This document shows positions 12,784-50,866 of a stretch of DNA of 64,000 nucleotides, piece after piece (position 1 is the first letter of the stretch; every line of letters starts with the position of its first letter). The notes under the pieces are model-generated. The model saw nothing but the letters and a program-made list of their open reading frames with translations, did no database searches and was not told the origin of the DNA. The DNA lies in the IMG/VR virus record IMGVR_UViG_3300031857_000002, positions 124,001-188,000 of that record, one strand, 5' to 3'. The position numbers were made by a program, and so were the translations under genes.

Positions 12784-13962
12784 ATGCTTAAATCTAAAAC
12801 TTCTTGTGTGATGCCTTACATGGGTCTAGCAATTCAAAATGACGGAGACTTTTGTGCTTGTAATAGAAACAATTGGAGTTATACCAATCGACAACAAGAA
12901 GTTTTGTTTGCCAATAAAAACACACTAGAAGAAGCATGGGCAAGCCCCACTAGAAAAATGTTGGCTGCTGGATTGGATTATGGAAAATCAATACCAAGTT
13001 GCAGTCCATGCACTAACTTAGAAGCCAGTGGCAAAATCAGTGCAAGACAAACGTTCAATAACCAATTTGGTCATCTTGCTCCGTTGCCTACTCAACCACG
13101 TGTGTTGATCATGAAACCAGGCAATGTTTGTAATCTGTCCTGTAGGATGTGCAATCCAGCAACCAGCACCACATGGTATCAGGATGGGTATAAATTAGCA
13201 AAGGCACATGACAATTTTGTTGGCACTCAAAAAGAATACACTGCACAATTTGAAACTATACGTTCGGCATTCAATCAAGAAAATCCCATATGGGATACCA
13301 TGGAACAGTGGCTGCCCAGTTTGGAATTTTTTGACATCTACGGAGGAGAACCATTCCTAGCTCCTGGTTTGTTTAAAGCCCTAACAGCAGTGGCCAAAGC
13401 AGACAAAAGTTCAACAGTGAGCTTGCAATTGCATACCAATGGTACGATATGGAATCCTGATTACTTGAATACATTGTCCAAGTACAAACACGTAAGAATA
13501 GGCATCAGCATTGACAGTGATGTAACCAGTCAGCTTGAGTACATTCGTTATCCACTGGAAGCTGACGTTGTTTGGCAAAATCTCAGCAGGTACAAAGACT
13601 GGGCAAGCAATCATTCCAACATAGAACTTTATATTTGTGTTACCCTTACGCCTCTTAATATATTTTACTTTGATTCAATTGACAAAAATTTAAGCAGGCA
13701 TTCATTACCAGTTGGCCACAATATTGTTTATAGCCCAACCGAATACGATGTGCGACACATACCAGTATCAGTGAGAAAAATTATTGCTGAGAAATTAAAA
13801 CATTATCCCACCCTGGCAAACTTTTTAATGCAGACCATACCAGGATGCGATGTTGCTTGGCCTAAGTTTTGGAAAATTACAAAAGAATTAGACAACATAC
13901 GCAATCAATCATTTGAATCAACGTTTCCTGAGTTTTATGAATTGATCAAGATGTATGTATGA
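12784..13962 (+). CDS. radical SAM protein with N-terminal SPASM/twitch-like Cys motif
   Basis: CNLSCRMC, GGEP, HTNGT, SID; preceded by TAAATA. Confidence 0.85.
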   Translation: MLKSKTSCVMPYMGLAIQNDGDFCACNRNNWSYTNRQQEVLFANKNTLEEAWASPTRKMLAAGLDYGKSIPSCSPCTNLEASGKISARQTFNNQFGHLAPLPTQPRVLIMKPGNVCNLSCRMCNPATSTTWYQDGYKLAKAHDNFVGTQKEYTAQFETIRSAFNQENPIWDTMEQWLPSLEFFDIYGGEPFLAPGLFKALTAVAKADKSSTVSLQLHTNGTIWNPDYLNTLSKYKHVRIGISIDSDVTSQLEYIRYPLEADVVWQNLSRYKDWASNHSNIELYICVTLTPLNIFYFDSIDKNLSRHSLPVGHNIVYSPTEYDVRHIPVSVRKIIAEKLKHYPTLANFLMQTIPGCDVAWPKFWKITKELDNIRNQSFESTFPEFYELIKMYV

Positions 13963-16158: not shown

Positions 16159-16330
16159 TTTGCAAACAAACCGGTTTCGCTAGGGCGGGAATTTGTACAC
16201 CAATCGTTAATAGATTAGCTCTACACCGGCAACAATCAAGGACCTCTCATCCTGACAACTGGTCCGACAGATACGCATCACTGCGCAGAGCCATCGGGGT
16301 TTACCCCTAAACGTTTTTTTTGTTTGCAAA
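16159..16330 (-). ncRNA. unassigned structured RNA, copy 1 (paralog of 20219..20376)
   Basis: 12-bp terminal inverted repeat TTTGCAAACAAA; internal hairpins; shared motifs AGGTCC, TGCC, AGAGCTA, ACAAAT. Confidence 0.65.
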
Positions 16331-16333
16331 ACT

Positions 16334-16418
16334 TGGTGCCCTAGGTCGGACTCGAACCGACACATATTTCTACGCCAGAACCTAAATCTGGTGCGTCTAC
16401 CAATTTCGCCACCAGGGC
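16334..16418 (-). tRNA. tRNA-Leu(TAG)
   Basis: Cloverleaf with long variable arm, encoded CCA. Confidence 0.92.
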
Positions 16419-16592
16419 TTATACTTCTACAACTTCTTGTAAACTGTCTTTGCGCATGAGAACTTTTCTTTCTTCTCCTACGCGGCGAACACTTAGGTAC
16501 TCAATCCCATCTAGTCGACGTACCATTCGTATGTTGTCACAGATGTAACGTTCAAGTGTGATTTTGTTTTCAAAAGTTTTAGTTTTTGTCAT
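16419..16592 (-). CDS. 57-aa hypothetical protein (MTKTKTFENKITLERYICDN...), not in the ORF track
   Basis: AGGAG RBS; translated by hand. Confidence 0.6.
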   Translation of the reverse strand: MTKTKTFENKITLERYICDNIRMVRRLDGIEYLSVRRVGEERKVLMRKDSLQEVVEV

Positions 16593-16622
16593 AGTGGTCT
16601 CCTATTAGATGTTGTACTTATC

Positions 16623-16714
16623 TGGCGGAAGACGGAGGAGTCGAACCCCATCCCATTTCTGAGAACCTGGTTTTCAAGGCCAGTCGCGGCACCAACGCCA
16701 CTGCATCATCTTCC
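16623..16714 (-). tRNA. tRNA-Ser(TGA)
   Basis: Long variable arm, G73 + CCA. Confidence 0.88.
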
Positions 16715-16721
16715 AAAAAGG

Positions 16722-16798
16722 TGGTCGGAATAGTAGGATTCGAACCTACGACCTCCTGGTCCCAAACCAGGCGCACTACCAGGCTGTGCTACACTCCG
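16722..16798 (-). tRNA. tRNA-Pro(TGG)
   Basis: Cloverleaf, encoded CCA. Confidence 0.92.
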
Positions 16799-16804
16799 AA
16801 TGTG

Positions 16805-16879
16805 TGGTACCTGGACACGGTTTCGAACCGCGGACCCTCTCCGTGTAAAGGAGACGCTCTACCCCTGAGCTATCCAGGC
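16805..16879 (-). tRNA. tRNA-Val(TAC)
   Basis: Cloverleaf, encoded CCA. Confidence 0.92.
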
Positions 16880-16887
16880 AAATTGTG

Positions 16888-16961
16888 TGGAGCGGAGTAG
16901 GGGAATCGAACCCCTCGCTTTAGCTTGGAAGGCTAAGGTATTACCACTATACGAACTCCGC
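16888..16961 (-). tRNA. tRNA-Gly(TCC)
   Basis: Cloverleaf, encoded CCA. Confidence 0.92.
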
Positions 16962-17010
16962 GTGTTGATACTTATAATAGTGTAACATGTACACTATAAA
17001 TAGTCAATCT

Positions 17011-18171
17011 ATGAACTTCCCAACCAACTACTGTGCATTGCCGTTTAGAGGCATGCAACTCGAATGTGATGGTGAGATTAAATCTTGCTGTCTGTACAAA
17101 CCACATCTTGATCAATCAATTACTCAATATCATATGACCAATTATGATCACTGGTGGAACAAATCTCTTGACCGAATACAAAATCATGTGATCAACAACA
17201 CCGTTGATCCTGGCTGCTCTTATTGTCTAGAGCCAACTATTCTTCCGCATCCTATGCGAACAGGCGCCAATGACTTTTTCAAACATGATCCACAATACAC
17301 ACCAGGTGACTCGCCTGAGTGGTTGGACATACGATTTGGCAACTTCTGCAATCTCAAATGTATGATGTGTACTCCTCTAAATAGTAGTCAAATTGAACTG
17401 GAATACAAAAACAATACCGCAGCCTACAATGCACAAGGAATTGCACACAGCAGTGGATGGAAACGATTCAGCATCGAAGACCAAGCGGCCAGCAAAGAAA
17501 ACTGGTGGGACAATTCTGAAACGTTTGCCAAGGTAGTCCAAATAGTAAATCGTGCTAGATATGTGAACTTCTCAGGAGGTGAACCTCTAATGATGCCACA
17601 ATTGTATGATCTCATGGATGCTATGAATCCCAACTGCATCATTACATTCAATACCAACTTGACCAGACTCACTGATCGCACTATGCAAGCATTGAAAAAA
17701 TTTAAAGATGTTAACTTGCAAGTCAGTTTAGACGGTGTTGGCGCACATCAAGAGTGGATACGTTGGAACAGCAACTGGCCTGAACTTGATCGCAACATTC
17801 AAACAGTTTGTAACACACCTAACATTAGAGTTACATTTAGTTATTTGTTACAACACACCACAATCTACACATGGCCAGCACTTTGGAAATATCTTGAACC
17901 ATTGAACTGTCAAATACTTGCAATGCCAGTGTACGCAGACACTATTGGCAAAGGTGTGTTAACACAACATTCGGCTGTGTCTACGGATGTTGAACGGTTT
18001 GTAGATTGGATCAAAGCCAACCCCAGTTCATGCAATCAAGAAATTGAACACTGGATTAGCAGTTATCAATTTGATCCTGTACTACACAAACAGTTTAGGG
18101 ACTATGTTGGTATGCTTGACAACATACGTGGTGGCAATTTCCGTGCCACGTTTGATCCTGCTTGGGACTAA
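17011..18171 (+). CDS. radical SAM protein with N-terminal SPASM/twitch-like Cys motif
   Basis: CALPF..DGEIKSCC; CNLKCMMC; SGGEP; TATAAATA just upstream. Confidence 0.85.
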   Translation: MNFPTNYCALPFRGMQLECDGEIKSCCLYKPHLDQSITQYHMTNYDHWWNKSLDRIQNHVINNTVDPGCSYCLEPTILPHPMRTGANDFFKHDPQYTPGDSPEWLDIRFGNFCNLKCMMCTPLNSSQIELEYKNNTAAYNAQGIAHSSGWKRFSIEDQAASKENWWDNSETFAKVVQIVNRARYVNFSGGEPLMMPQLYDLMDAMNPNCIITFNTNLTRLTDRTMQALKKFKDVNLQVSLDGVGAHQEWIRWNSNWPELDRNIQTVCNTPNIRVTFSYLLQHTTIYTWPALWKYLEPLNCQILAMPVYADTIGKGVLTQHSAVSTDVERFVDWIKANPSSCNQEIEHWISSYQFDPVLHKQFRDYVGMLDNIRGGNFRATFDPAWD

Positions 18172-18524
18172 TCCCAATACATTTCATTGTGGCACTGGTA
18201 GTAATACTCACGCTCTAAGGCAATCATGTCCTCATAGTCAACTCTGTAGTTGAACATGGGATTGCCCCCAATGGAAATTCTAACATAACTTGCCGGCGCC
18301 CACTCGGGACCTGGCGTTTGTTTTTTGTACTGGATGAACCAGGCATTGTTGTTGTGCTGGAACGAATGGCCTCGTTGGTTACGCCAGTTTGCCACAATGT
18401 CCGCAAACACTGCCTGAGGCAAACTCCATGTGTGTGCATGTGCATCACTCACACGTATGCTCAAGTCTATTGACTCGCGATCCTTGAACACATATAATTT
18501 TAATGGTTTGGTAAATTCTAACAT
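18168..18524 (-). CDS. hypothetical protein
   Basis: ORF between tRNA-Gln and the radical SAM gene. Confidence 0.55.
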   Translation of the reverse strand: MLEFTKPLKLYVFKDRESIDLSIRVSDAHAHTWSLPQAVFADIVANWRNQRGHSFQHNNNAWFIQYKKQTPGPEWAPASYVRISIGGNPMFNYRVDYEDMIALEREYYYQCHNEMYWD

Positions 18525-18538
18525 ACACTACTTATTGG

Positions 18539-18615
18539 TGGCAGGAGATATAGGATTCGAACCTATGCGTGTCGGAATCAAAATCCGATGCCTTGACCAA
18601 CTTGGCGAATCTCCA
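18539..18615 (-). tRNA. tRNA-Gln(TTG)
   Basis: Cloverleaf, unpaired 1:72, encoded CCA. Confidence 0.9.
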
Positions 18616-18626
18616 GTAAAACTACA

Positions 18627-18701
18627 TGGTGGATGAGAGTAGAGTCGAACTACTACTTGACTCCGTATGAAGGAGGCGCACTACCATTATGCTACTCATC
18701 C
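18627..18701 (-). tRNA. tRNA-Met(CAT), probably elongator
   Basis: G1-C72 paired, loop TT-CAT-AC, encoded CCA. Confidence 0.8.
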
Positions 18702-18778
18702 TGGGGTGCATGATGGGGGTCGAACCCACGCATATCGGAATCACAATCCGAGGTCTTAACCACTTGACGACACGCACC
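18702..18778 (-). tRNA. tRNA-His(GTG)
   Basis: Encoded G-1 and C73, encoded CCA. Confidence 0.92.
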
Positions 18779-18894
18779 ATATAGGAGCACTCTCAACAGC
18801 AGGCCTAGAAGGCAATCTGGTTGCTGAAACTTTTGCATCTGCAGATACTAGGTTTCTTCTTCCGCTTTGACTTACGCCAAGAATGCTTTTATAT
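18779..18894 (-). ncRNA. unassigned stem-capped RNA between tRNA-Lys and tRNA-His
   Basis: Terminal stem AUAUAAAAGCAUUCU / AGAGUGCUCCUAUAU fills the entire spacer. Confidence 0.5.
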
Positions 18895-18967
18895 GGTAGG
18901 GGTGTTCGGGAACGATCCGAATTTTACTGGTTAAAAGCCAGTTACTTCACCTTAAAGTTTCACCCCC
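18894..18967 (-). tRNA. tRNA-Lys(TTT) with atypical T-loop
   Basis: Anticodon arm ACTGG-CTTTTAA-CCAGT; T-loop ATCGTTC; encoded CCA. Confidence 0.85.
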
Positions 18968-19017
18968 GTAGGTTTGGGTATCTTATCACTGTCCATCGGG
19001 ACTCTCCTTTAAAAATC

Positions 19018-19091
19018 TGGTAGCCTGTAGAGGTTACGATCCTCTGTCGCTCGATTATCAGTCGAGTGCTCTTCCATTGAGCTAACGGGCT
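19018..19091 (-). tRNA. tRNA-Ile(GAT)
   Basis: Cloverleaf; T-loop ATCGTAA; encoded CCA. Confidence 0.85.
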
Positions 19092-19095
19092 GTAT

Positions 19096-19170
19096 TGGTA
19101 CCGCCATATGGAATCGAACCACAATTTCCAGGTTCGTAGCCTGGAGTATTATCCATTATACTATAGCGAT
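19096..19170 (-). tRNA. tRNA-Arg(ACG)
   Basis: Cloverleaf, encoded CCA. Confidence 0.9.
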
Positions 19171-19175
19171 GTTGT

Positions 19176-19250
19176 TGGTGCCGACTATCGGATTCGAACT
19201 GATGACCTATCGCTTACAAGGCGATTGCACTACCACTGTGCTAAGTCGGC
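19176..19250 (-). tRNA. tRNA-Thr(TGT)
   Basis: Cloverleaf, encoded CCA. Confidence 0.92.
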
Positions 19251-19254
19251 TAAT

Positions 19255-19330
19255 TGGCTCCCCAACGTGGGCTCGAACCACGGACCAACAGATTAACAGT
19301 CTGCTACTCTACCGACTGAGCTATTGGGGA
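19255..19330 (-). tRNA. tRNA-Asn(GTT)
   Basis: Cloverleaf, encoded CCA. Confidence 0.92.
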
Positions 19331-19340
19331 ATGATTGATA

Positions 19341-19430
19341 TGGCCGAGAGCCTGGGAGTCGAACCCAGTGACCGTATTACTACGGTCTACGGATTAGCAA
19401 TCCGCTGCATTACCGTCCTGCCCGCTCTCG
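19341..19430 (-). tRNA. tRNA-Ser(GCT)
   Basis: Long variable arm, encoded CCA. Confidence 0.9.
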
Positions 19431-19470
19431 ACAATCTACTTAGTAGGCACTCAAGCCTTCTACAAAAATC

Positions 19471-19545
19471 TGGTGGACCGTCCCGGGATCGAACCGGGGA
19501 CTGAAGCTTGCAAAGCTACTGTGTTCCCATCTATACCAACAGCCC
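19471..19545 (-). tRNA. tRNA-Ala(TGC)
   Basis: G3:U70 pair, encoded CCA. Confidence 0.92.
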
Positions 19546-19550
19546 ATGTG

Positions 19551-19624
19551 TGGCGTACCTCCAAGGACTCGAACCTTGACTGACGGTTTTGGAGACCGCG
19601 GTGCTGCCATTACACCAGAGATAC
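19551..19624 (-). tRNA. tRNA-Trp(CCA)
   Basis: Loop CT-CCA-AA, encoded CCA end. Confidence 0.9.
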
Positions 19625-19794
19625 CTAACACACTCTTTGGAATGTGTGTATTAAAGCACTCTAAAATACTTAGGCTGCCTGTTCTTAAAGAATGCTTTAA
19701 TACGCTGTAATTTTTTGTTCTACAAGAAGAACTCTATCCTACAGGCCGCCCATTTGCAGTTTTGAGTGATGCAGGCTCTCGTTGCCATTGCACT

Positions 19795-19829
19795 AAAAGA
19801 AAAACCCTAGAGTGTTTAGTTCCAGGGTC
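19795..19829 (-). terminator. intrinsic terminator of the putative attenuator
   Basis: Stem GACCCUGGA / UCUAGGGUU followed by UUUCUUUU. Confidence 0.8.
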
Positions 19830-19853
19830 CTTTGGGTAGAATACTAATGTACT

Positions 19854-19970
19854 TTACACGGACCCCGGGTCTCCTGGAATGCTATTCACGCGACCGTTCG
19901 CATGCGTCCAGGCCGATGGCTGGATAAACATGGATGTCTTTGACAGTGAATAGAATTTTGTTTTCATCAT
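19854..19970 (-). CDS. putative 38-aa attenuator leader peptide MMKTKFYSLSKTSMFIQPSAWTHANGRVNSIPGDPGSV
   Basis: ATG lies 6 nt after the -10 hexamer (leaderless); last codons form the antiterminator arm. Confidence 0.7.
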   Translation of the reverse strand: MMKTKFYSLSKTSMFIQPSAWTHANGRVNSIPGDPGSV

Positions 19971-19976
19971 GTACCT

Positions 19977-20005
19977 ATTATAGTTTATTTATGGTTGACA
20001 GTCAA
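19977..20005 (-). promoter_or_regulatory. sigma70 promoter of the leader/tRNA operon
   Basis: TTGACT-N17-TATAAT; palindrome GGTTGAC-N-GTCAACC overlaps the -35. Confidence 0.8.
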
Positions 20006-20042
20006 CCTGTTTTTGAACTTTTATTTATCAAGTTCACCAAAT

Positions 20043-20118
20043 TGGTTGCGGGAGGAGGAATCGAACCTTCCATCTGTGAGCTTATGAGACTCACGTGCGA
20101 CCACTACACTTTCCCGCG
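20043..20118 (-). tRNA. initiator tRNA-fMet(CAT)
   Basis: C1:A72 mismatch, 5' CGCGGG, ends AACCA. Confidence 0.85.
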
Positions 20119-20137
20119 GTAATACTTATACAAAAAT

Positions 20138-20215
20138 TGGAACACAGGGTGAGATTTGAACTCACGACTTTACGGATTTGCAATCCGTTGCATTTGACCG
20201 CTCTGCCACCTGTGC
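20138..20215 (-). tRNA. tRNA-Cys(GCA)
   Basis: U73 + CCA. Confidence 0.9.
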
Positions 20216-20218
20216 ATA

Positions 20219-20376
20219 TTTTTATAGTCAAGCACCGAGAGATGCCGATTTGTCAACAAAGTAGCTAGCTCTGACAAGCGAATGGCAGTTATGTCAGGAC
20301 CTGTTCCTCGCACAGTTAGGCCCGAATAGTGACAGCGTCCCGTCACGATACCTTTATCGATGCTTGACTATAAAAA
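20219..20376 (-). ncRNA. unassigned structured RNA, copy 2 (paralog of 16159..16330)
   Basis: Perfect 16-bp terminal inverted repeat TTTTTATAGTCAAGCA; internal hairpins; shared motifs with copy 1. Confidence 0.7.
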
Positions 20377-20459
20377 CATATTGAAACACACTAACTACCT
20401 TGGTATGTACTCAAGTTCATTGAACCGCTACGACCCTATCTTTAATGTGCTTCAATATG
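20377..20459 (-). ncRNA. unassigned stem-capped RNA
   Basis: Terminal stem CATATTGAAGCACA / TGTGTTTCAATATG. Confidence 0.5.
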
Positions 20460-20658
20460 CTCTGCATCCCCCGGCGGTAATTGTAGTACAGAAAGATACG
20501 ACGCTATCGTACCCATCACACGTACCTTCCACCCGCTTCCCGACAGGGACCGTTCTCGCATTGCTAGCGGCCTTTAGGTTCGAAGACTACCACCCGTAGT
20601 TGTCACACTACTTCTCATCCTGTGGGTCACAGTATCCAGAGACTAATCTGGAACGTTC
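20460..20658 (-). ncRNA. unassigned GC-rich structured RNA directly 3' of tRNA-Tyr
   Basis: No credible ORF; hairpins such as TCCAGA/TCTGGA, CTGTG/CACAG, GTAGT/ACTAC, TACGA/TCGTA. Confidence 0.55.
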
Positions 20659-20823: not shown

Positions 20824-20831
20824 AAATAAGG

Positions 20832-20896
20832 GAGAGCCACGGTTGCAGGACCTAGTGCTTCGTTACCGAAGGAAGTGTCCAGGCGATGTGACTCTC
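20832..20896 (-). ncRNA. unassigned 65-nt structured RNA
   Basis: Stems GAGAGTCAC/GTGGCTCTC, CCTGG/CTAGG and CTTCG-GTAA-CGAAG (GNRA loop). Confidence 0.55.
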
Positions 20897-20902
20897 AAAA
20901 CT

Positions 20903-22357: not shown

Positions 22358-22485
22358 AATTTTCCTTTAAAATAAAAATGATCTATAAACTTAATTAGTG
22401 GTTTATACTAGTAGTATACATGAATTTTCTAACAAAACTTGTGCGTGTGCGCACATGATTGGTACGAAAGTTTGAAATTATTGCC

Positions 22486-22512
22486 AAAAGAAAACCCGCC
22501 GGAGCGGGTTTT
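22486..22512. terminator. intrinsic terminator ending the tmRNA coding piece
   Basis: AAAACCCGC-CGGA-GCGGGTTTT. Confidence 0.85.
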
Positions 22513-22694
22513 GGTGGTTTCTGTTACGAGGTATTTCCTACCCTAGGCTGCGTTTAGGCTGCCAAAGCGAACTGTTCGTCGTTTGCATTTACGGTTTTTG
22601 TGTCTTCGACCAGGTTACCCCAATCCTAACGGCTTCTACCTTGCCGGACTGTCCATGTTGTTACTCTTGACCCAATCGATCCTGTGTCAGGCCC
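22495..22694 (-). ncRNA. ssrA: two-piece (permuted) tmRNA, coding piece; tag ANDEQFALAA* at 22554..22586
   Basis: 5' GGGCCTG acceptor strand, GGATCGA D-region, GTAAAT-GCA resume context, typical proteolysis tag. Confidence 0.9.
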
Positions 22695-22695
22695 A

Positions 22696-22905
22696 TCATA
22701 ACGATTTTCGTCCCCAATTAATAATGTTCCATACTCTTTCATGAATATAATACAATATTGTATTCACTATTAATTGTGTTATAGCAATAGGTCCTGCAAT
22801 TGATAAGTTACCTGAAATTAACAAGACTATGAGGAATGTTGCACCCGATCCTGTTAATCTCCAACTTATAGTTTTTACAATGCTTCTCAAATTGCTATCG
22901 TTCAT
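22696..22905 (-). CDS. DUF2061-like small membrane protein inside the tmRNA intervening segment
   Basis: RSIVKTISWR...YYIHERVW..I.WG; AAGGA RBS immediately after the tmRNA CCA. Confidence 0.8.
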   Translation of the reverse strand: MNDSNLRSIVKTISWRLTGSGATFLIVLLISGNLSIAGPIAITQLIVNTILYYIHERVWNIINWGRKSL

Positions 22906-22914
22906 AAATCCTTA

Positions 22915-22978
22915 TGGTGGACCTGGCGGGCACTGCCCCCGCGTCTTGAATCCTTTTCTCTCTACTTCATACAGTCTT
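22915..22978 (-). ncRNA. ssrA: two-piece tmRNA, acceptor piece
   Basis: T-arm GCGGG-GGCAGTG-CCCGC; CAGGTCC-A-CCA pairs with GGGCCTG giving G3:U70. Confidence 0.88.
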
Positions 22979-23156
22979 AAACTTGCTCCACTATCTGAAT
23001 ATCCAGTCTTAACGGCTGATCCCAGTTGACCCAGGGTATGGTGCCGGCTTCTCTGGCACTCTCAATATCATCCAATATTTCGGTGACATTGTAGCCAGGC
23101 CCAGGAATGTCTCGTTCCTGCCATAGTTGATTTTGCATTGAGATAGTGATTTTCAT
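22977..23156 (-). CDS. 59-aa hypothetical protein (MKITISMQNQLWQERD...), not in the ORF track
   Basis: Translated by hand; TAAATA upstream. Confidence 0.5.
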   Translation of the reverse strand: MKITISMQNQLWQERDIPGPGYNVTEILDDIESAREAGTIPWVNWDQPLRLDIQIVEQV

Positions 23157-47284: not shown

Positions 47285-48209
47285 CTATTTTGGCTAAAGT
47301 TTGTCCGCCTCTTAACGAACTAATTTGACCAGGACGTTGCAGTTCCAACCATGACAAATCACCAAGACCTGTGTGTTGATATACAATATCAAACCCTGCT
47401 GATTCGGCTGCCTGGACAATTGCTCGACCAGGTGTATAGCACATGAATTTTTGTTCAGCTAACTCTACGTTGTGCGCACGATCACAATCGTTGATGGTCA
47501 TGATAACCATGCCACCTGGCCGCATTTTTTTGTACATCTCTACGAGATAGCGTGTGATCAATTCCATAGGACGGAAATTGAAATAGTTGTAGGCAAAGAT
47601 CAATCCAAACTGGTCATTGGGCAACGCAGCCAGTATATGTTCGTCTGTTTCGTTGATCACATAAGGTCTTAGTCTTGCTCGATATGTGTCATTGAATTCG
47701 CTTAGTGCAGGATCTATTAGATCCTGATGTTGATCCACAATATACAAAGGATCCAATGGCACAAGTTCTTGAATGAATGTTTCACGGCTAGGTCTGATAA
47801 TCATACCAGGCACACGCCAATCAGTATAACTGCGAAGACGATTTCGCAGGATCAAGTTGCTCTCATCGTCAATTGCCAACTTTCTATTCAGCAGGTACTC
47901 GTTACTTTCCCAACACATTTCATCTTGATAGAATCGTGTGCTTTCTTTATAGTAGGCAACTTCTTGCTTTTTGATCTGTAGGTCAAGATCGCTTTTGAGG
48001 CCAGAGAATACTTTGTCAAACTGGTCAAACGAATCCTTTACAGCAGAGAACCGTTTTTCAATACGATGTTTGTAAAATCCAATATCTGACTCGTTGTTAG
48101 CAACCACATGATTTATAGCAGACAACTCGTGTTCAGCCTGTCCACGTATGGCGTCAAGACTCATACTTTCAAGTTGATTACGATAGGCAATAATGCTACT
48201 GAGTTTCAT
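47268..48209 (-). CDS. coiled-coil plus SAM methyltransferase-like protein
   Basis: LPNDQFGLI..FN, MRPGG motif. Confidence 0.5.
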   Translation of the reverse strand: MKLSSIIAYRNQLESMSLDAIRGQAEHELSAINHVVANNESDIGFYKHRIEKRFSAVKDSFDQFDKVFSGLKSDLDLQIKKQEVAYYKESTRFYQDEMCWESNEYLLNRKLAIDDESNLILRNRLRSYTDWRVPGMIIRPSRETFIQELVPLDPLYIVDQHQDLIDPALSEFNDTYRARLRPYVINETDEHILAALPNDQFGLIFAYNYFNFRPMELITRYLVEMYKKMRPGGMVIMTINDCDRAHNVELAEQKFMCYTPGRAIVQAAESAGFDIVYQHTGLGDLSWLELQRPGQISSLRGGQTLAKIVARSK

Positions 48210-50866
48210 TCAAATGCAAATAAACTTGTAAATGTGTTTTCTGTGTTGGTTGCTGACGCTAAGTTCCATTCCAACACACCTAGCAAGTTGTCAACCTTTT
48301 GGTCCACAACAGTTGCTTCCATCAGTCCGTCATCAAACGGCAATTCCTTAAACCATTCTGGTAGGCGTTGTTCATCAGTGGGATAGCCGATGCTGGTCCA
48401 GCCAAGTGCATTTGACTTGAGCTTGCACACAATAGTTTTCATACCATCCACAATCTGCATTGAGTAGTTGTCACCATTCATCCTACGCATTTGATTCCAG
48501 TTCATTGCGGCCCTGACGTGCCCTGGCATGTTGGCTTTGCCAAGGCGGGCCTCTTCTGCCGCATACTTGGTCAAGTTATTCACACGCTTGGGCGAACCTT
48601 TTTCCCACCCTGGCCGTTCCATAAACTCATACTTGAATTCACGAATACGTTCGATGATTGCTTCACGTGTGGCACCATGCAATGTACTATTTAGAATTTC
48701 CAACAAGAAGTCTTGAATTACCTTGGGCGTATCACTACGCTTCAAGTCTAGGCCCATGGCTTTGGTTTTGCCTTTCTTGCCGTCCACATCTAGTCTCTTG
48801 CCCTCAAGGTCAATGATGTTTACAGCATAACGTTTCTTTGTGATAAACAATCCGCGATCTGCTACCAGTTCTCGACCTGCCGCAATCAGCGCACCCATCT
48901 CTCTTGGGCAGTGAAATGCCTGTTCCATAAAGCCCGGAAAACTCTCATTCACTTGTTCAGCAATGGAGTCATACAGTTGGATGCAAGTTTCCTTGTTCCA
49001 CTCCATGCGACCTTCTGCTACTTCCTTCTTTAACACTGGCCAAGCAGTAAAGTAACAGGAGTCTGTGTCACCATAAATGATAGCTTCGCCTGTGTGATCA
49101 TATATGCCAGTGATACACTCATTAATATGTGCATCCATGTGCCGAGCAATGGCACGACCAGTCAAGGTAGTTGACTGACCAATTCTGTGATCAAAGAATC
49201 TGCAACCTGAATTCAAAATAGCACCATATAACGAGTTCAAGTTAATCTTCTTGACCAACTGCCTCTTGTCCCAGAATGCTTCTTCTTTTTTGTCCTTGGC
49301 TGTTTTCTTTTTGGCCTGCAGTTCTTTACGTTCCGAATACCAGCGTTCCAACAAACCCGGGATGATACCCTTCTTCTCATATGTAAGGATAGTTCCGTTA
49401 GCACTCATGATCCAAGGCTGGTTGCTGTCAAACATAATGGTCCAGATCTCTGCGGCACTGTGTGTGCTTTCTGTGCCATCCTGCCAGTCAATGGTGATCT
49501 CTGTACCACGTTGCTGTTCCATCACCGCAGTGTATTCTAAACTGCCAAACAAGCCCTCCCAGGCCGCCGCAAAACTTGCACCCTTGGCAATCTTTTCTTT
49601 GATATACTGGTCAGTCATGATAGGACGCAGTTGTCCCACCACAGTCTCTGGACCCATGTTCATGGCACGAATAGCCGAAGGATACAGACTGTTAATGTCA
49701 ACAGATCCAATCCAATCATGCAAGCCCTTCTTTGGATAAGCAACATACGCACCTGCGGCTTGTGTGTCATCATCTGTTAGGCGTTGCTTGCGATTGGGTA
49801 CAACCATGCCACGTTCATGTGCTTCATTGATAATGGCCTGCTCGGTCACTGCCACAGCACCCATTGTAGTTTGTAGCAACACAGTATTGGCATGTGCCAA
49901 TTCGCTTGCTAGAGCCAAAAATTGTAGTTTACGATCCAATTTGTGCAACAACAATGTATCTTGTCTGTTGTATTCAATAAACTTTTTGAAGTGTTGATTG
50001 TACAACTGATCCAAAGTGCCTTCGAACTGTGTCTTGCGCTCATTGAGTTCGTATTCGCCAATGGCATCTAAACTGTAACTATGACGTTCTTCATACGTGT
50101 ACTTGCGATACAATTGCATATAGTCCATATGCACACGACCAATCAAGTCATATGTTTGATTCTCGCTGCCAAAGCGTTCAAACATACGCATCTTGGGCAA
50201 TTGTCCCCACAAGCAGAACTTGCGTGTGTCGTCTTTGCTTAACACACGAGTGCAACGATTCACAGTGTATGGAATATCGTAACCCTCTGAGTTCCAGCCT
50301 GACAGCACATCTGCATCTTCAATCAAGTCTAGGAATGTTTTGATCATATCCTCTTCTCGTTCAAACAGCATGGTGTTTTCAAAGTCCTTTACAAGGTCTT
50401 GCGCAGTCTCCCAACTTAACCCACGAGGCGGAACTGCTAGTGTGACCAATTGATCTAACCAGTTTAGGTAGACTGAGATTGCAGTGATGGGATTGAATGG
50501 ATCACTCACTGGCGAGAAACCTCGCTCTTTGTCAAAGTCTACCTCAATGTCAAAAAATGCAACATTGAGTTCTGGGGCGTCTTGGTCTTTGTAGTTTTCT
50601 TCTAAACAACGAAAGATTGGGTTGATATCACTCTCGTACAATTGCTTGCTGGAGTGCATTTTGACTTCCTTGCGGAACTCTTTGTTGTTGCGGGTTGAGA
50701 AACGACTAACAGGTGTGCCGTAGATGCTTTGGAACTTGCCTCGGGCATCGTCATAGTAAAAGATGTAGTTGGCAGGATACTCTTGGTATTTCCTCACGCC
50801 GTCTCGGCGTTCTACAACATGAATGCGATCGTGTTCACGATCAAAAAGTGCGTCAATATAACTCAT
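48206..50866 (-). CDS. family B DNA polymerase (gp43-like)
   Basis: FDIE exonuclease I, DINSLYPS, KINLNSLYG, YGDTDS, KKRY. Confidence 0.97.
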   Translation of the reverse strand: MSYIDALFDREHDRIHVVERRDGVRKYQEYPANYIFYYDDARGKFQSIYGTPVSRFSTRNNKEFRKEVKMHSSKQLYESDINPIFRCLEENYKDQDAPELNVAFFDIEVDFDKERGFSPVSDPFNPITAISVYLNWLDQLVTLAVPPRGLSWETAQDLVKDFENTMLFEREEDMIKTFLDLIEDADVLSGWNSEGYDIPYTVNRCTRVLSKDDTRKFCLWGQLPKMRMFERFGSENQTYDLIGRVHMDYMQLYRKYTYEERHSYSLDAIGEYELNERKTQFEGTLDQLYNQHFKKFIEYNRQDTLLLHKLDRKLQFLALASELAHANTVLLQTTMGAVAVTEQAIINEAHERGMVVPNRKQRLTDDDTQAAGAYVAYPKKGLHDWIGSVDINSLYPSAIRAMNMGPETVVGQLRPIMTDQYIKEKIAKGASFAAAWEGLFGSLEYTAVMEQQRGTEITIDWQDGTESTHSAAEIWTIMFDSNQPWIMSANGTILTYEKKGIIPGLLERWYSERKELQAKKKTAKDKKEEAFWDKRQLVKKINLNSLYGAILNSGCRFFDHRIGQSTTLTGRAIARHMDAHINECITGIYDHTGEAIIYGDTDSCYFTAWPVLKKEVAEGRMEWNKETCIQLYDSIAEQVNESFPGFMEQAFHCPREMGALIAAGRELVADRGLFITKKRYAVNIIDLEGKRLDVDGKKGKTKAMGLDLKRSDTPKVIQDFLLEILNSTLHGATREAIIERIREFKYEFMERPGWEKGSPKRVNNLTKYAAEEARLGKANMPGHVRAAMNWNQMRRMNGDNYSMQIVDGMKTIVCKLKSNALGWTSIGYPTDEQRLPEWFKELPFDDGLMEATVVDQKVDNLLGVLEWNLASATNTENTFTSLFAFE

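What the first reader, a model, noticed from the sequence alone, without database searches (positions are those of the whole stretch)
16159..20376. Two diverged copies of an unknown ~160-170-nt structured RNA, each directly 3' of another RNA gene
Seen in sequence: 16159-16330 and 20219-20376 have different perfect closing stems (12 and 16 bp) but the same internal order on the minus strand. Both show hairpin, hairpin, UCGG(A/G)CC...AGG...AGGUCC(U)UGA...UGCC...UGU(C)AGAGCUA...ACAAAU. Conserved single-stranded motifs with fully exchanged helices are the usual signature of a functional ncRNA family. I do not recognise it as a tRNA, SRP, 6S, RNase P, Y RNA or known small ribozyme. Function (decoy, ribozyme, protein scaffold) is unknown.
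Basis: partly seen in the sequence, partly recalled or inferred. Interest (0 to 1): 0.78.

Follow-up and report, generated by a model that had tools for sequence, protein, structure and literature searches.

The report
Two unrelated phage tRNA-array RNAs
Both elements are real, conserved, structured small RNA genes inside a freshwater jumbo phage's tRNA array, but they belong to two separate new RNA families rather than being two copies of one, and what they do is still unknown.

Summary
The window is part of a 320-kb uncultured freshwater jumbo phage with 26 tRNAs and a permuted tmRNA on the minus strand.

**Observation.** Both elements exist at the stated coordinates. They have perfect 12-bp and 16-bp closing repeats and no Rfam match.

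**One family or two.** The claim that they are diverged copies of one family fails every test:
- The pairwise alignment is not above chance.
- A covariance model of each family does not find the other.
- A 29-sequence profile of copy 2 misses copy 1.

**Copy 2 (20219-20376, minus strand).**
- It belongs to a large new family, with at least 119 IMG/VR loci and 97 distinct sequences.
- It is single-copy in 7 of 8 near-complete relatives.
- The fold is a 17-25-bp closing helix, a four-way junction with invariant junction strands, and a covarying 4-bp pseudoknot.
- 28 of 34 pairs show compensatory change.
- The closing helix usually ends within a few nucleotides of the flanking tRNA genes.

**Copy 1 (16159-16330, minus strand).** It belongs to a small separate family of 9 distinct sequences, with 14 of 52 pairs compensatory. 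It usually lies 1-3 nt after tRNA-Leu.

Several of the "conserved single-stranded motifs" are helix strands or are not conserved in relatives.

**Best reading.** These are independent RNA genes co-transcribed with tRNAs and released by tRNA-processing nucleases. Transcription, processing and function are untested.

The parts
20219..20376 (-). Copy 2: member of a large new phage RNA family (a pseudoknotted four-way junction closed by a long helix)
   Evidence: R3 scores it 135.5 bits. Family alignments are A6 and A7, with covariation. There is no Rfam hit.
20357..20376 (-). Copy 2, P1 5' strand (16 perfect bp plus the UCGA extension)
   Evidence: Perfect 16-bp arm. The extension UCGA/UCGG changes compensatorily to UCAA/UUGA in L176, L220 and L222. 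Family P1 is 17-25 contiguous bp.
20219..20238 (-). Copy 2, P1 3' strand; it ends 3 nt before tRNA-Cys
20329..20346 (-). Copy 2, hairpin HpB (7 bp, conserved loop GACG)
   Evidence: 6 of 7 pairs show change on both sides in 97 sequences (helix 3).
20297..20323 (-). Copy 2, P3 (6 bp with a near-invariant G.U, internal loop, 2-bp P3b, apical loop)
   Evidence: 100% of cells are paired. G.U occurs in 96 of 97 sequences, and pairs 52-75, 53-74, 54-70 and 57-66 covary.
20308..20311 (-). Copy 2, pseudoknot 5' strand (GCGA in the P3 apical loop)
   Evidence: It pairs with 20278-20281. All 97 distinct sequences are paired, switching between GC/AU (56) and CG/GC (41). These columns were not in the model's structure.
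20278..20281 (-). Copy 2, pseudoknot 3' strand (UCGC in the P4/P5 joining strand)
20243..20287 (-). Copy 2, P4 (UGCC/GGCA) enclosing P5 and the conserved AAAU
   Evidence: P4 variants UGCU/AGCA, UGAC/GUCA and UGGU/ACCA, and P5 outer pairs with 3-4 pair types.
16159..16330 (-). Copy 1: member of a small, separate structured RNA family
   Evidence: R1 scores it 199 bits. Homologs are in G001, G002, G034, G036, G057, G058, L265 and L267.
16235..16256 (-). Copy 1, hairpin HpC (8 bp with a bulge, conserved loop GAGAG).
   Evidence: helix 5.
16334..16418 (-). tRNA-Leu(UAG), 3 nt upstream of copy 1
20138..20215 (-). tRNA-Cys(GCA), 3 nt downstream of copy 2
20379..20457 (-). 79-nt hairpin-closed insertion between the 200-nt RNA and copy 2
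   Evidence: It is absent at exactly these boundaries in G001, G002 and G003 and present in L125, L126, L127 and L135.
20458..20658 (-). About 200-nt conserved structured RNA between tRNA-Tyr and copy 2 (a third unknown family)
   Evidence: Compensatory changes appear. There are 44 distinct homologs. There is no Rfam hit.

Best explanation
The two loci are two different RNA genes, not paralogs.

**Shown: copy 2**
- It is the single copy, in this genome, of a widespread family of freshwater jumbo-phage RNAs about 140-165 nt long.
- The fold is a long closing helix P1 (17-25 continuous bp) leading into a four-way junction (P1, HpB, P3, P4-P5).
- The joining strands are almost invariant, P3 carries a near-invariant G.U, and a 4-bp pseudoknot links the P3 loop to the strand between P4 and P5.
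- The element fills the spacer between two tRNA genes, so the base of P1 lies within a few nucleotides of the upstream tRNA 3' end and the downstream tRNA 5' end.

**Shown: copy 1**
- It is a member of a second, rarer family.
- The fold is a 9-12-bp closing helix, three hairpins and a P4-P5 domain.
- It usually lies 1-3 nt after tRNA-Leu.

**Inferred**
- Both are transcribed from the tRNA-operon promoters as part of polycistronic precursors.
- RNase P cutting at the downstream tRNA makes the 3' end of copy 2.
- tRNA 3' processing makes the 5' ends.
- The ~21-bp perfect P1 of copy 2 is a host RNase III substrate, like an rRNA processing stem.

**Inferred more weakly**
- The compact, invariant core is then a stable trans-acting RNA. 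It would bind a protein or small ligand, or catalyse a reaction, related to translation or tRNA metabolism during infection.
- The actual function is unknown.
For: **Real RNA structure, minus strand**
- Copy-2 family: 98% of cells are paired and 28 of 34 pairs are compensatory. The covariation score is 0.626 against 0.206 shuffled and <=0.119 when slid.
- The pseudoknot is 100% paired with a concerted two-pair switch.
- Copy-1 family: 95.6% of cells are paired and 14 of 52 pairs are compensatory. The score is 0.230 against 0.113.
- Conserved G.U pairs would be A.C on the plus strand.

**Separate families**
-.

**Breadth and conservation**
- One copy in each of five near-complete relatives, and also present in G001.
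- Copy 2 is 52-99% identical to its relatives, in genomes whose proteins are about 60-67% identical.
- It is confined to phage-like DNA: only 2 true hits among representative genomes of 185,579 prokaryote species, both on short MAG contigs.

**tRNA embedding**
- 64 of 92 members have a tRNA starting within 10 nt of the P1 end.
- 35 of 92 have a tRNA ending within 10 nt before P1, and in 11 of those P1 includes the NCCA.
- 84 of 92 have a tRNA within 300 nt.
- Copy-1 members lie 1-3 nt after tRNA-Leu.

**Other**
- P1 length distribution.
- Promoter-like sites upstream of both tRNA clusters on the minus strand.
- Precedents for orphan RNAs in phage tRNA islands are T4 RNAC and RNAD (PMC9697503) and ROOL and GOLLD (PMC12286853).
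Against: - No transcript ends, processing sites or stable RNA were observed.
- The metatranscriptome contigs that cover both loci cannot be told from DNA carry-over. Copy 1 has the same depth as the neighbouring coding sequence.
- No partner protein emerged. The gene co-occurrence screen had only one copy-2-negative genome and gave nothing RNA-related.
- The phage encodes no RNase III and no Ro/TROVE protein.
- One near-complete relative (G005) lacks both RNAs, so neither is essential to the clade.
- The A7 and A8 alignments were fitted to the models, which favours the modelled pairs. The pseudoknot columns are exempt from this bias.
Confidence: 0.6

Rival explanations
1. The elements act only in cis, as folding insulators and nuclease entry sites. 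They would keep neighbouring tRNAs from mispairing and let RNase III or RNase P separate them, with no function after release.
For: P1 reaches the boundaries of the flanking tRNAs and sometimes pairs with the upstream NCCA. The elements come and go between relatives and sit in many different tRNA contexts. G005 does without them.
Against: A spacer does not need invariant junction strands, a near-invariant G.U, conserved loops and a covarying pseudoknot kept across genomes with about 60% protein identity. Most tRNA-tRNA spacers in this array are only 0-10 nt.
Confidence: 0.2
2. One or both are new self-cleaving or otherwise catalytic RNAs involved in tRNA end maturation, like the HDV-like theta ribozymes found at the 3' ends of phage tRNAs.
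For: Both lie immediately next to tRNA ends. The pseudoknotted, highly conserved core is of ribozyme grade. The precedent is PMC10879173.
Against: In copy 2 the conserved core is separated from both tRNA junctions by about 20 bp of variable helix, so it cannot reach them in cis. There is no match to any Rfam ribozyme family. No cleavage data exist.
Confidence: 0.1
3. One reading: the two are very diverged paralogs of one RNA family.
For: They share the same array and strand, a similar size, a closing helix and a broadly similar order of hairpins followed by a P4-P5 domain. They share short strings in the same order. Copy 1 occurs mostly in the sub-clade whose copy 2 also has a UGU...ACA P5 base.
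Against: The alignment is not above chance. Cross-searches with both covariance models and a profile HMM fail. The junction topology differs: copy 1 has a five-way junction with an extra GGGG/CCCC hairpin, and copy 2 has a four-way junction with a pseudoknot. None of the copy-2 invariant nucleotides are present in copy 1.
Confidence: 0.07
4. They are DNA-level elements (miniature inverted-repeat transposons, recombination sites or origins), not RNAs. Alternatively, they are short protein-coding genes.
For: They have perfect terminal inverted repeats, presence/absence polymorphism and overlapping ORFs of 52 and 58 aa.
Against: Each is single-copy per genome. The terminal repeats differ between family members while staying complementary. 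Strand-specific G.U pairs and internal compensatory changes are present. Length varies by 1-2 nt steps, which is incompatible with a reading frame.
Confidence: 0.02

Closest known systems
Phage T4 species 1 and 2 RNAs (RNAC, RNAD)
   Same: They are 119-139-nt stable RNAs encoded inside a phage tRNA gene cluster on the same strand as the tRNAs, directly after a tRNA. Their function is still unknown (PMC9697503).
   Different: No sequence or structural similarity was found. R3 finds nothing in the T4 genome. T4 RNAC carries a T-arm-like hairpin that is absent here.
ROOL and GOLLD RNAs
   Same: They are structured, pseudoknotted RNAs of phages and prophages, often next to tRNA islands, with unknown function (PMC12286853).
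   Different: They are 500-800+ nt and form multimeric cages. The RNAs here are 140-175 nt and have no Rfam match to either.
HDV-like theta ribozymes of gut phages
   Same: They are small structured RNAs placed at the ends of phage tRNA genes and are proposed to take part in tRNA maturation (PMC10879173).
   Different: Theta ribozymes are minimal nested double pseudoknots whose cleavage site abuts the tRNA 3' end. Here there is no HDV-family match, and a ~20-bp helix lies between the core and the tRNA.
rRNA-operon processing stems (RNase III)
   Same: A long, near-perfect helix formed by the 5' and 3' flanks encloses a structured RNA inside a polycistronic precursor that also holds tRNAs (established E. 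coli biology, from my own knowledge).
   Different: This is only an analogy for P1 of copy 2. No cleavage was shown, and P1 of copy 1 (9-12 bp) is too short.
Y RNAs (Ro/Rsr ligands)
   Same: They have a closing helix formed by both ends. The 8-mer CUUGACUA in the P1 3' strand of this window's copy 2 equals the vertebrate Y RNA 3' strand (recalled from memory).
   Different: There is no bulged C and no G.U in the helix. The 8-mer is confined to one P1 type and most family members have a different P1. There is no TROVE protein in the phage, no Rfam Y_RNA hit and no tRNA-like domain.

Membership tests
Copy-2-type RNA family (defined here, model R3) | Significant score with the family covariance model | tested here: met
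   Copy 2 scores 135.5 bits, E about 1e-29.
Copy-2-type RNA family (defined here, model R3) | The same test applied to copy 1 (16159-16330) | tested here: not met
   Copy 1 is not listed at E<=10 with filters off. The only hit in the own genome is copy 2. The nhmmer profile also misses it.
Copy-2-type RNA family (defined here, model R3) | Invariant junction motifs and the P3-loop pseudoknot | tested here: met
   Copy 2 has GGUAUCG, loop GACG, CUAUUCGGG, UCCUGACAUAACUG, AAAU and GCGA/UCGC. Copy 1 has none of them.
Copy-1-type RNA family (defined here, model R1) | Significant score with the family covariance model | tested here: met
   Copy 1 scores 199 bits. Copy 2 scores only 5.5 bits, E=6.4.
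Any Rfam 15 family (tRNA, SRP, 6S, RNase P, Y RNA, ribozymes, riboswitches, ROOL, GOLLD) | A match to the curated covariance model | tested here: not met
   There is no hit over either element at the gathering threshold or at E<=10, including short-stretch scans with lax filters.
T4 RNAC/RNAD | Sequence or structure homology to the T4 RNAs | tested here: not met
   R3 finds no hit in NC_000866. Inspection shows no shared motifs. R1 was not run on T4.
Y RNA | Ro-binding helix with a bulged C, and a cognate TROVE protein | tested here: not met
   P1 is a perfect helix without a bulge. PF05731 is absent from the genome. A host Ro protein could not be tested.
Self-cleaving ribozyme (HDV-like/theta or other) | Site-specific self-scission | not testable with these tools
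   The only relevant result is the lack of Rfam ribozyme matches.
Miniature inverted-repeat transposable element | Multiple copies per genome sharing the same terminal repeats | tested here: not met
   Each is single-copy. The terminal helices covary between genomes.
Stable processed small RNA | A discrete transcript with defined ends | tested here: inconclusive
   RNA-library contigs cover both loci, but depth is assembler depth and DNA carry-over is not excluded.

The most novel reading that the evidence does not exclude
The copy-2 family is a new class of functional core RNA, specific to jumbo-phage tRNA islands. It could be a ribozyme, a ligand-binding aptamer, or the RNA subunit of a phage or host RNP that acts on tRNAs or the ribosome. 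Its pseudoknotted four-way junction would be the active site, and its RNase III-length closing helix would be the release device. Copy 1 and the neighbouring 200-nt RNA would be further unrelated members of a hidden set of RNA genes carried in these arrays.
Probability: 0.25. Interest if true: 0.85.

Novelty: new variant of a known kind. Interest (0 to 1): 0.6.

Why it matters
Phage tRNA islands are known to hold orphan structured RNAs, such as T4 RNAC and RNAD, ROOL and GOLLD, whose roles have remained unknown for years to decades. This window adds at least two, and probably three or more, compact new families. One has about a hundred distinct natural variants, a well-defined pseudoknotted fold and a fixed geometry relative to the flanking tRNAs. 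That makes it a tractable object for in vitro processing, probing, structure determination and ligand or partner searches. It also suggests that jumbo-phage "tRNA arrays" are general RNA-gene islands. Finally, it is a caution for scans: shared short motifs between two structured spacers in one array are not evidence of common ancestry.

Tried and rejected
1. **Rfam.** Gathering and E<=10 scans, including short-stretch scans, found nothing over either element.
2. **GenBank phages.** Near and distant BLAST found only tRNA matches. The nearest cultured relatives by DNA polymerase are Sinorhizobium phage Phosso at 51% and Agrobacterium phage Atu_ph07 at 47%. They lack the copy-2 family.
3. **T4 RNAC/RNAD.** No likeness was found.
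4. **Y RNA lead.** It came from the 8-mer CUUGACUA in P1. I rejected it because the 8-mer is confined to one P1 type, the helix has no bulge, and there is no TROVE protein.
5. **Local hairpin CGAUA/UAUCG in copy 2.** I rejected it as a family feature. Most members lack the 5' CGAUA, and the competing P1 extension shows a compensatory G-C to A-U change.
6. **GGACC/GGUCC helix in copy 1.** Relatives break it. The 3' strand pairs instead within the GAGAG-loop hairpin.
7. **The minimum-free-energy fold of copy 2** conflicts with the covariation, for example in HpB.
8. **Palindromic CGGCCG loops as dimerisation sites.** They are better explained by the pseudoknot.
9. **Gene co-occurrence across eight genomes.** The genes absent from the copy-2-negative genome G005 (NAD synthase, a B12-binding radical SAM protein, an Rpb6-like protein and small unknown ORFs) give no convincing partner. 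There is only one negative genome.
10. **Phage-encoded RNase III.** It is absent.
11. **Metatranscriptome contigs.** They show presence only, with no ends and no proof of transcription.
12. **Supplementary tables of the IMG/VR structured-RNA catalogue (PMC10690425).** They are not held, so I could not check whether either family is already among its unnamed candidates.

Full report
**Setting.** The window is bases 124001-188000 of a 320,175-bp virus record with 44% G+C. It carries 26 tRNA genes and a permuted tmRNA, all on the minus strand, and a family-B DNA polymerase. The polymerase's nearest cultured relatives are Sinorhizobium phage Phosso (51%) and Agrobacterium phage Atu_ph07 (47%). Public runs that hold the sequence are mostly lake and freshwater metagenomes. 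This is an uncultured freshwater jumbo phage.

**The observation.** On the minus strand, 16330-16159 (copy 1, 172 nt) and 20376-20219 (copy 2, 158 nt) have perfect terminal inverted repeats of 12 and 16 bp.
- About 3.6 perfect 12-bp repeats with that spacing are expected in 320 kb and 8 are found. About 0.014 are expected for 16 bp.
- Both fold better than shuffled controls (z -3.5 and -5.7).
One pattern has a single further match.
- Copy 1 begins 3 nt after the encoded CCA of tRNA-Leu(UAG). Copy 2 ends 3 nt before tRNA-Cys.
- Neither matches any Rfam 15 family, even at E<=10 on short stretches.

**Are they two copies of one thing?** No test supports this.
- A local alignment of the two scores z=2.6. 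In 22 of 1000 dinucleotide shuffles the score is as good, and unrelated genome windows score higher against copy 1.
- A covariance model of the copy-1 family (R1) gives copy 2 only 5.5 bits, E=6.4, in the middle of about 95 chance hits.
- A profile HMM of 29 copy-2 relatives does not find copy 1 at E<=100 in the whole genome.
- The final model of the copy-2 family (R3, 89 distinct sequences), run with filters off, does not list copy 1 at E<=10. It finds exactly one hit in the genome.
- The shared motifs dissolve once relatives are seen.
  - AGGUCC(U)UGA is a helix strand in both but pairs with different partners.
  - The AGG and UGU(C)AGAGCUA strings are lineage-specific.
  - ACAAAU survives only as AAAU, and only in the copy-2 family.

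**Copy 2: family size and spread.** A first motif scan of IMG/VR found four near-identical relatives. A scan with the P1/5' sequence found 42 loci.
- After removing chance hits there are about 92-97 distinct sequences, 52-99% identical to the window's copy with a median of 65%.
- They come from contigs of up to 364 kb.
- Five near-complete relatives each carry one copy, and G001 also carries it. One near-complete relative, G005, has none. In G005 the 200-nt upstream RNA runs straight into a tRNA.
- Median protein identity between these genomes and the window's genome is only 59-67%, and 84.5% for G001. The RNA is therefore under strong constraint.
- Among representative genomes of 185,579 prokaryote species, only two short MAG contigs hold a true member. 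The family is phage-borne.

**Copy 2: the fold.** The consensus rests on alignment A7 of 97 distinct rows.
- *P1.* It has 17-25 continuous base pairs, median 21. There are two main sequence types, and 10 of the 11 modelled pairs change on both sides.
- *Joining strand after P1.* It reads AAGGUAUC.
- *HpB.* It is a 7-bp hairpin with a conserved GACG loop, and 6 of 7 pairs are compensatory.
- *Second joining strand.* It reads UAUKC.
- *P3.* It has six pairs including a near-invariant G.U (96 of 97), then an internal loop and a 2-bp P3b.
- *Third joining strand.* It reads URANAUAAC.
- *P4.* It has 3-6 bp and covaries: UGCC/GGCA, UGCU/AGCA, UGAC/GUCA, UGGU/ACCA.
- *P5.* It is a two-part hairpin followed by AAAU.
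- *Overall.* 98% of cells are paired and 28 of 34 pairs show compensatory change. The covariation score is 0.626, against 0.206 in shuffles and at most 0.119 when partners are slid.
- *Pseudoknot.* A search among unpaired columns found four further pairs between the P3 apical loop and the strand between P4 and P5. These are GCGA/UCGC in the window and GCCG/CGGC in others. All 97 sequences are paired, with a 56:41 two-pair switch. These columns were not in the model's structure, so model fitting does not explain them.
Most members lack its 5' strand, and the competing P1 extension UCGA/UCGG changes compensatorily to UCAA/UUGA.
- *Strand.* G.U pairs, including the near-invariant one, fix the minus strand as the RNA strand.

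**Copy 2: context.** Counts are from 92 distinct members.

| Feature | Members |
|---|---|
| tRNA gene starts within 10 nt after the P1 3' end (mostly -2 to +6) | 64 |
| tRNA ends within 10 nt before P1 | 35 |
| of those, P1 includes the last five tRNA nucleotides (NCCA) | 11 |
| tRNA within 300 nt | 84 |

- Upstream neighbours are mostly tRNA-Glu and tRNA-Tyr. Downstream neighbours are tRNA-Asp, Cys, Lys, Tyr and Met.
- The element therefore occupies a whole inter-tRNA spacer, and the base of its closing helix brings the two tRNA ends together.
- In the window its 5' neighbour is a 79-nt hairpin-closed insertion (20379-20457). This insertion is absent at exactly those boundaries in three relatives.
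- Beyond that lies a roughly 200-nt conserved structured RNA (20458-20658).

**Copy 1.** R1 and a three-block motif scan found homologs in only a handful of contigs, giving nine distinct sequences.
- *Parts.* It has a 9-12-bp P1 that is almost invariant, an A-rich linker, a GGGG/CCCC hairpin and a two-part hairpin whose outer stem covaries.
- *GAGAG hairpin.* This is a 7-8-bp hairpin with the invariant loop GAGAG.
- *P4-P5 domain.* It ends in the conserved GCCCURGCGAAACCGG.
- *Covariation.* 95.6% of cells are paired and 14 of 52 pairs are compensatory. The score is 0.230, against 0.113 in shuffles and at most 0.054 when slid.
- *Context.* Most members lie 1-3 nt after tRNA-Leu(UAG).
- *Distribution and rate.* It is absent from G005, G007, G031, G037 and G041. 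It evolves faster than copy 2: 84-91% identity against 98-99% in the same pair of relatives.

**How it probably works.** Three things are shown. There are two separate, conserved, strand-specific RNA structures. Their positions are fixed relative to tRNA genes. They are single-copy. The rest is inferred.
- Sigma-70-like promoter matches lie upstream of both tRNA clusters on the minus strand, at 21300-21272 and 17007-16979. Both elements would therefore be made as parts of polycistronic tRNA precursors.
- RNase P cutting at the next tRNA would create the 3' end of copy 2. tRNA 3' processing would create the 5' ends.
- The ~21-bp perfect P1 of copy 2 is the length of a classical RNase III substrate. 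It resembles the processing stems of rRNA operons. This comparison draws on my own knowledge.
- The phage has no RNase III of its own, so the host enzyme would act.
- The invariant junction strands, the G.U and the pseudoknot argue that the released core does something specific: binding a protein or ligand, or catalysis. They argue against a passive spacer.
- The core is about 20 bp away from both tRNA junctions. This argues against a theta-ribozyme-like role in cutting tRNA ends in cis.
- I found no partner. There is no TROVE protein. The co-occurrence screen had only one copy-2-negative genome and returned nothing telling.
- Transcription is not demonstrated. RNA-library contigs cover both loci, but at depths that do not exclude DNA.

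**Comparison with known systems.**
- The closest analogues are the T4 species 1 and 2 RNAs. They have the same kind of place and size, and their function is still unknown (PMC9697503).
- ROOL and GOLLD are also close in kind. They sit in phage tRNA islands, have unknown function, and are much larger (PMC12286853).
- Theta ribozymes are tRNA-adjacent but have a different fold and geometry (PMC10879173).
- Membership in any of these, or in any Rfam family, was tested and not met wherever it could be tested.
- Either family may already be among the thousands of unnamed IMG/VR candidates of PMC10690425. I could not check this.

**Verdict.**
- The interpretation "functional ncRNA" is supported.
- The interpretation "two diverged copies of one family" is not supported.
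- The copy-2 family in particular is a well-supported, widespread new structured RNA with a ribozyme- or riboswitch-grade fold and an unusual relation to its flanking tRNAs.

Noticed in passing
window 20458-20658 (-): A roughly 200-nt conserved structured RNA lies between tRNA-Tyr and copy 2. It shows compensatory changes between relatives, has 44 distinct homologs in the fetched loci, and has long invariant blocks (e.g. GGUCCCUGUCGGGAAGCGGGUGGAAGG and ACCGCCGGGGGAUGCAGAGCAU). It has no Rfam match. The metatranscriptome depth bin 20409-20575 is by far the highest in the region (up to 3394).
   Followed up: partly
window 20379-20457 (-): A 79-nt element is closed by a 12-bp helix with one G.U. 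It is present in this phage and some relatives (L125, L126, L127, L135). In G001, G002 and G003 it is cleanly absent at the same boundaries. It behaves as an insertion/deletion module of the array.
   Followed up: partly
window 16627-16714 (-): A tRNA-like sequence with a long variable arm is missed by ARAGORN. It scores 36 bits with the Rfam tRNA-Sec model, below the gathering score of 47, and has an encoded CCA end. It may be an unusual tRNA.
   Followed up: no
window 12784-13962 (+) and 16987-18171 (+): Two paralogous radical-SAM genes of about 393 aa are the only plus-strand genes inside the minus-strand tRNA array. One has a SPASM-like N-terminal match.
   Followed up: partly
window 22463-23007 (-): The phage encodes a permuted (two-piece type) tmRNA with tag ANDEQFALAA. 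It hints at a host with two-piece tmRNA, such as Alphaproteobacteria.
   Followed up: no
window 19625-20042 (-), 18778-18893 (-), 20824-20902 (-): There are further non-tRNA, non-coding-looking spacers inside the array. 19650-19701 forms a hairpin whose closing helix weakly resembles the copy-2 P1 (R3 14.7 bits, E=0.14). These could be more small RNA modules.
   Followed up: no
L317 (G005:C1:106144-106342): The relative that lacks both elements has a different insertion of about 200 nt between tRNA-Glu and tRNA-Tyr. It looks like yet another structured RNA module.
   Followed up: no
window 48206-50866 (-) versus G005: The DNA polymerase is 97% identical to that of G005, while the median protein identity of the two genomes is only 62%. 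This suggests recent exchange of the polymerase gene between diverged jumbo phages.
   Followed up: no
copy-2 family, inner end of P1 (window about 20347-20360): In both main P1 types, the conserved joining strand UAUCG has a potential partner that overlaps the inner end of P1. The partner is a 5' CGAUA in one type and a 3' GAUA in the other. Single variants do not preserve this pairing, so it may be coincidence or an alternative conformer.
   Followed up: partly
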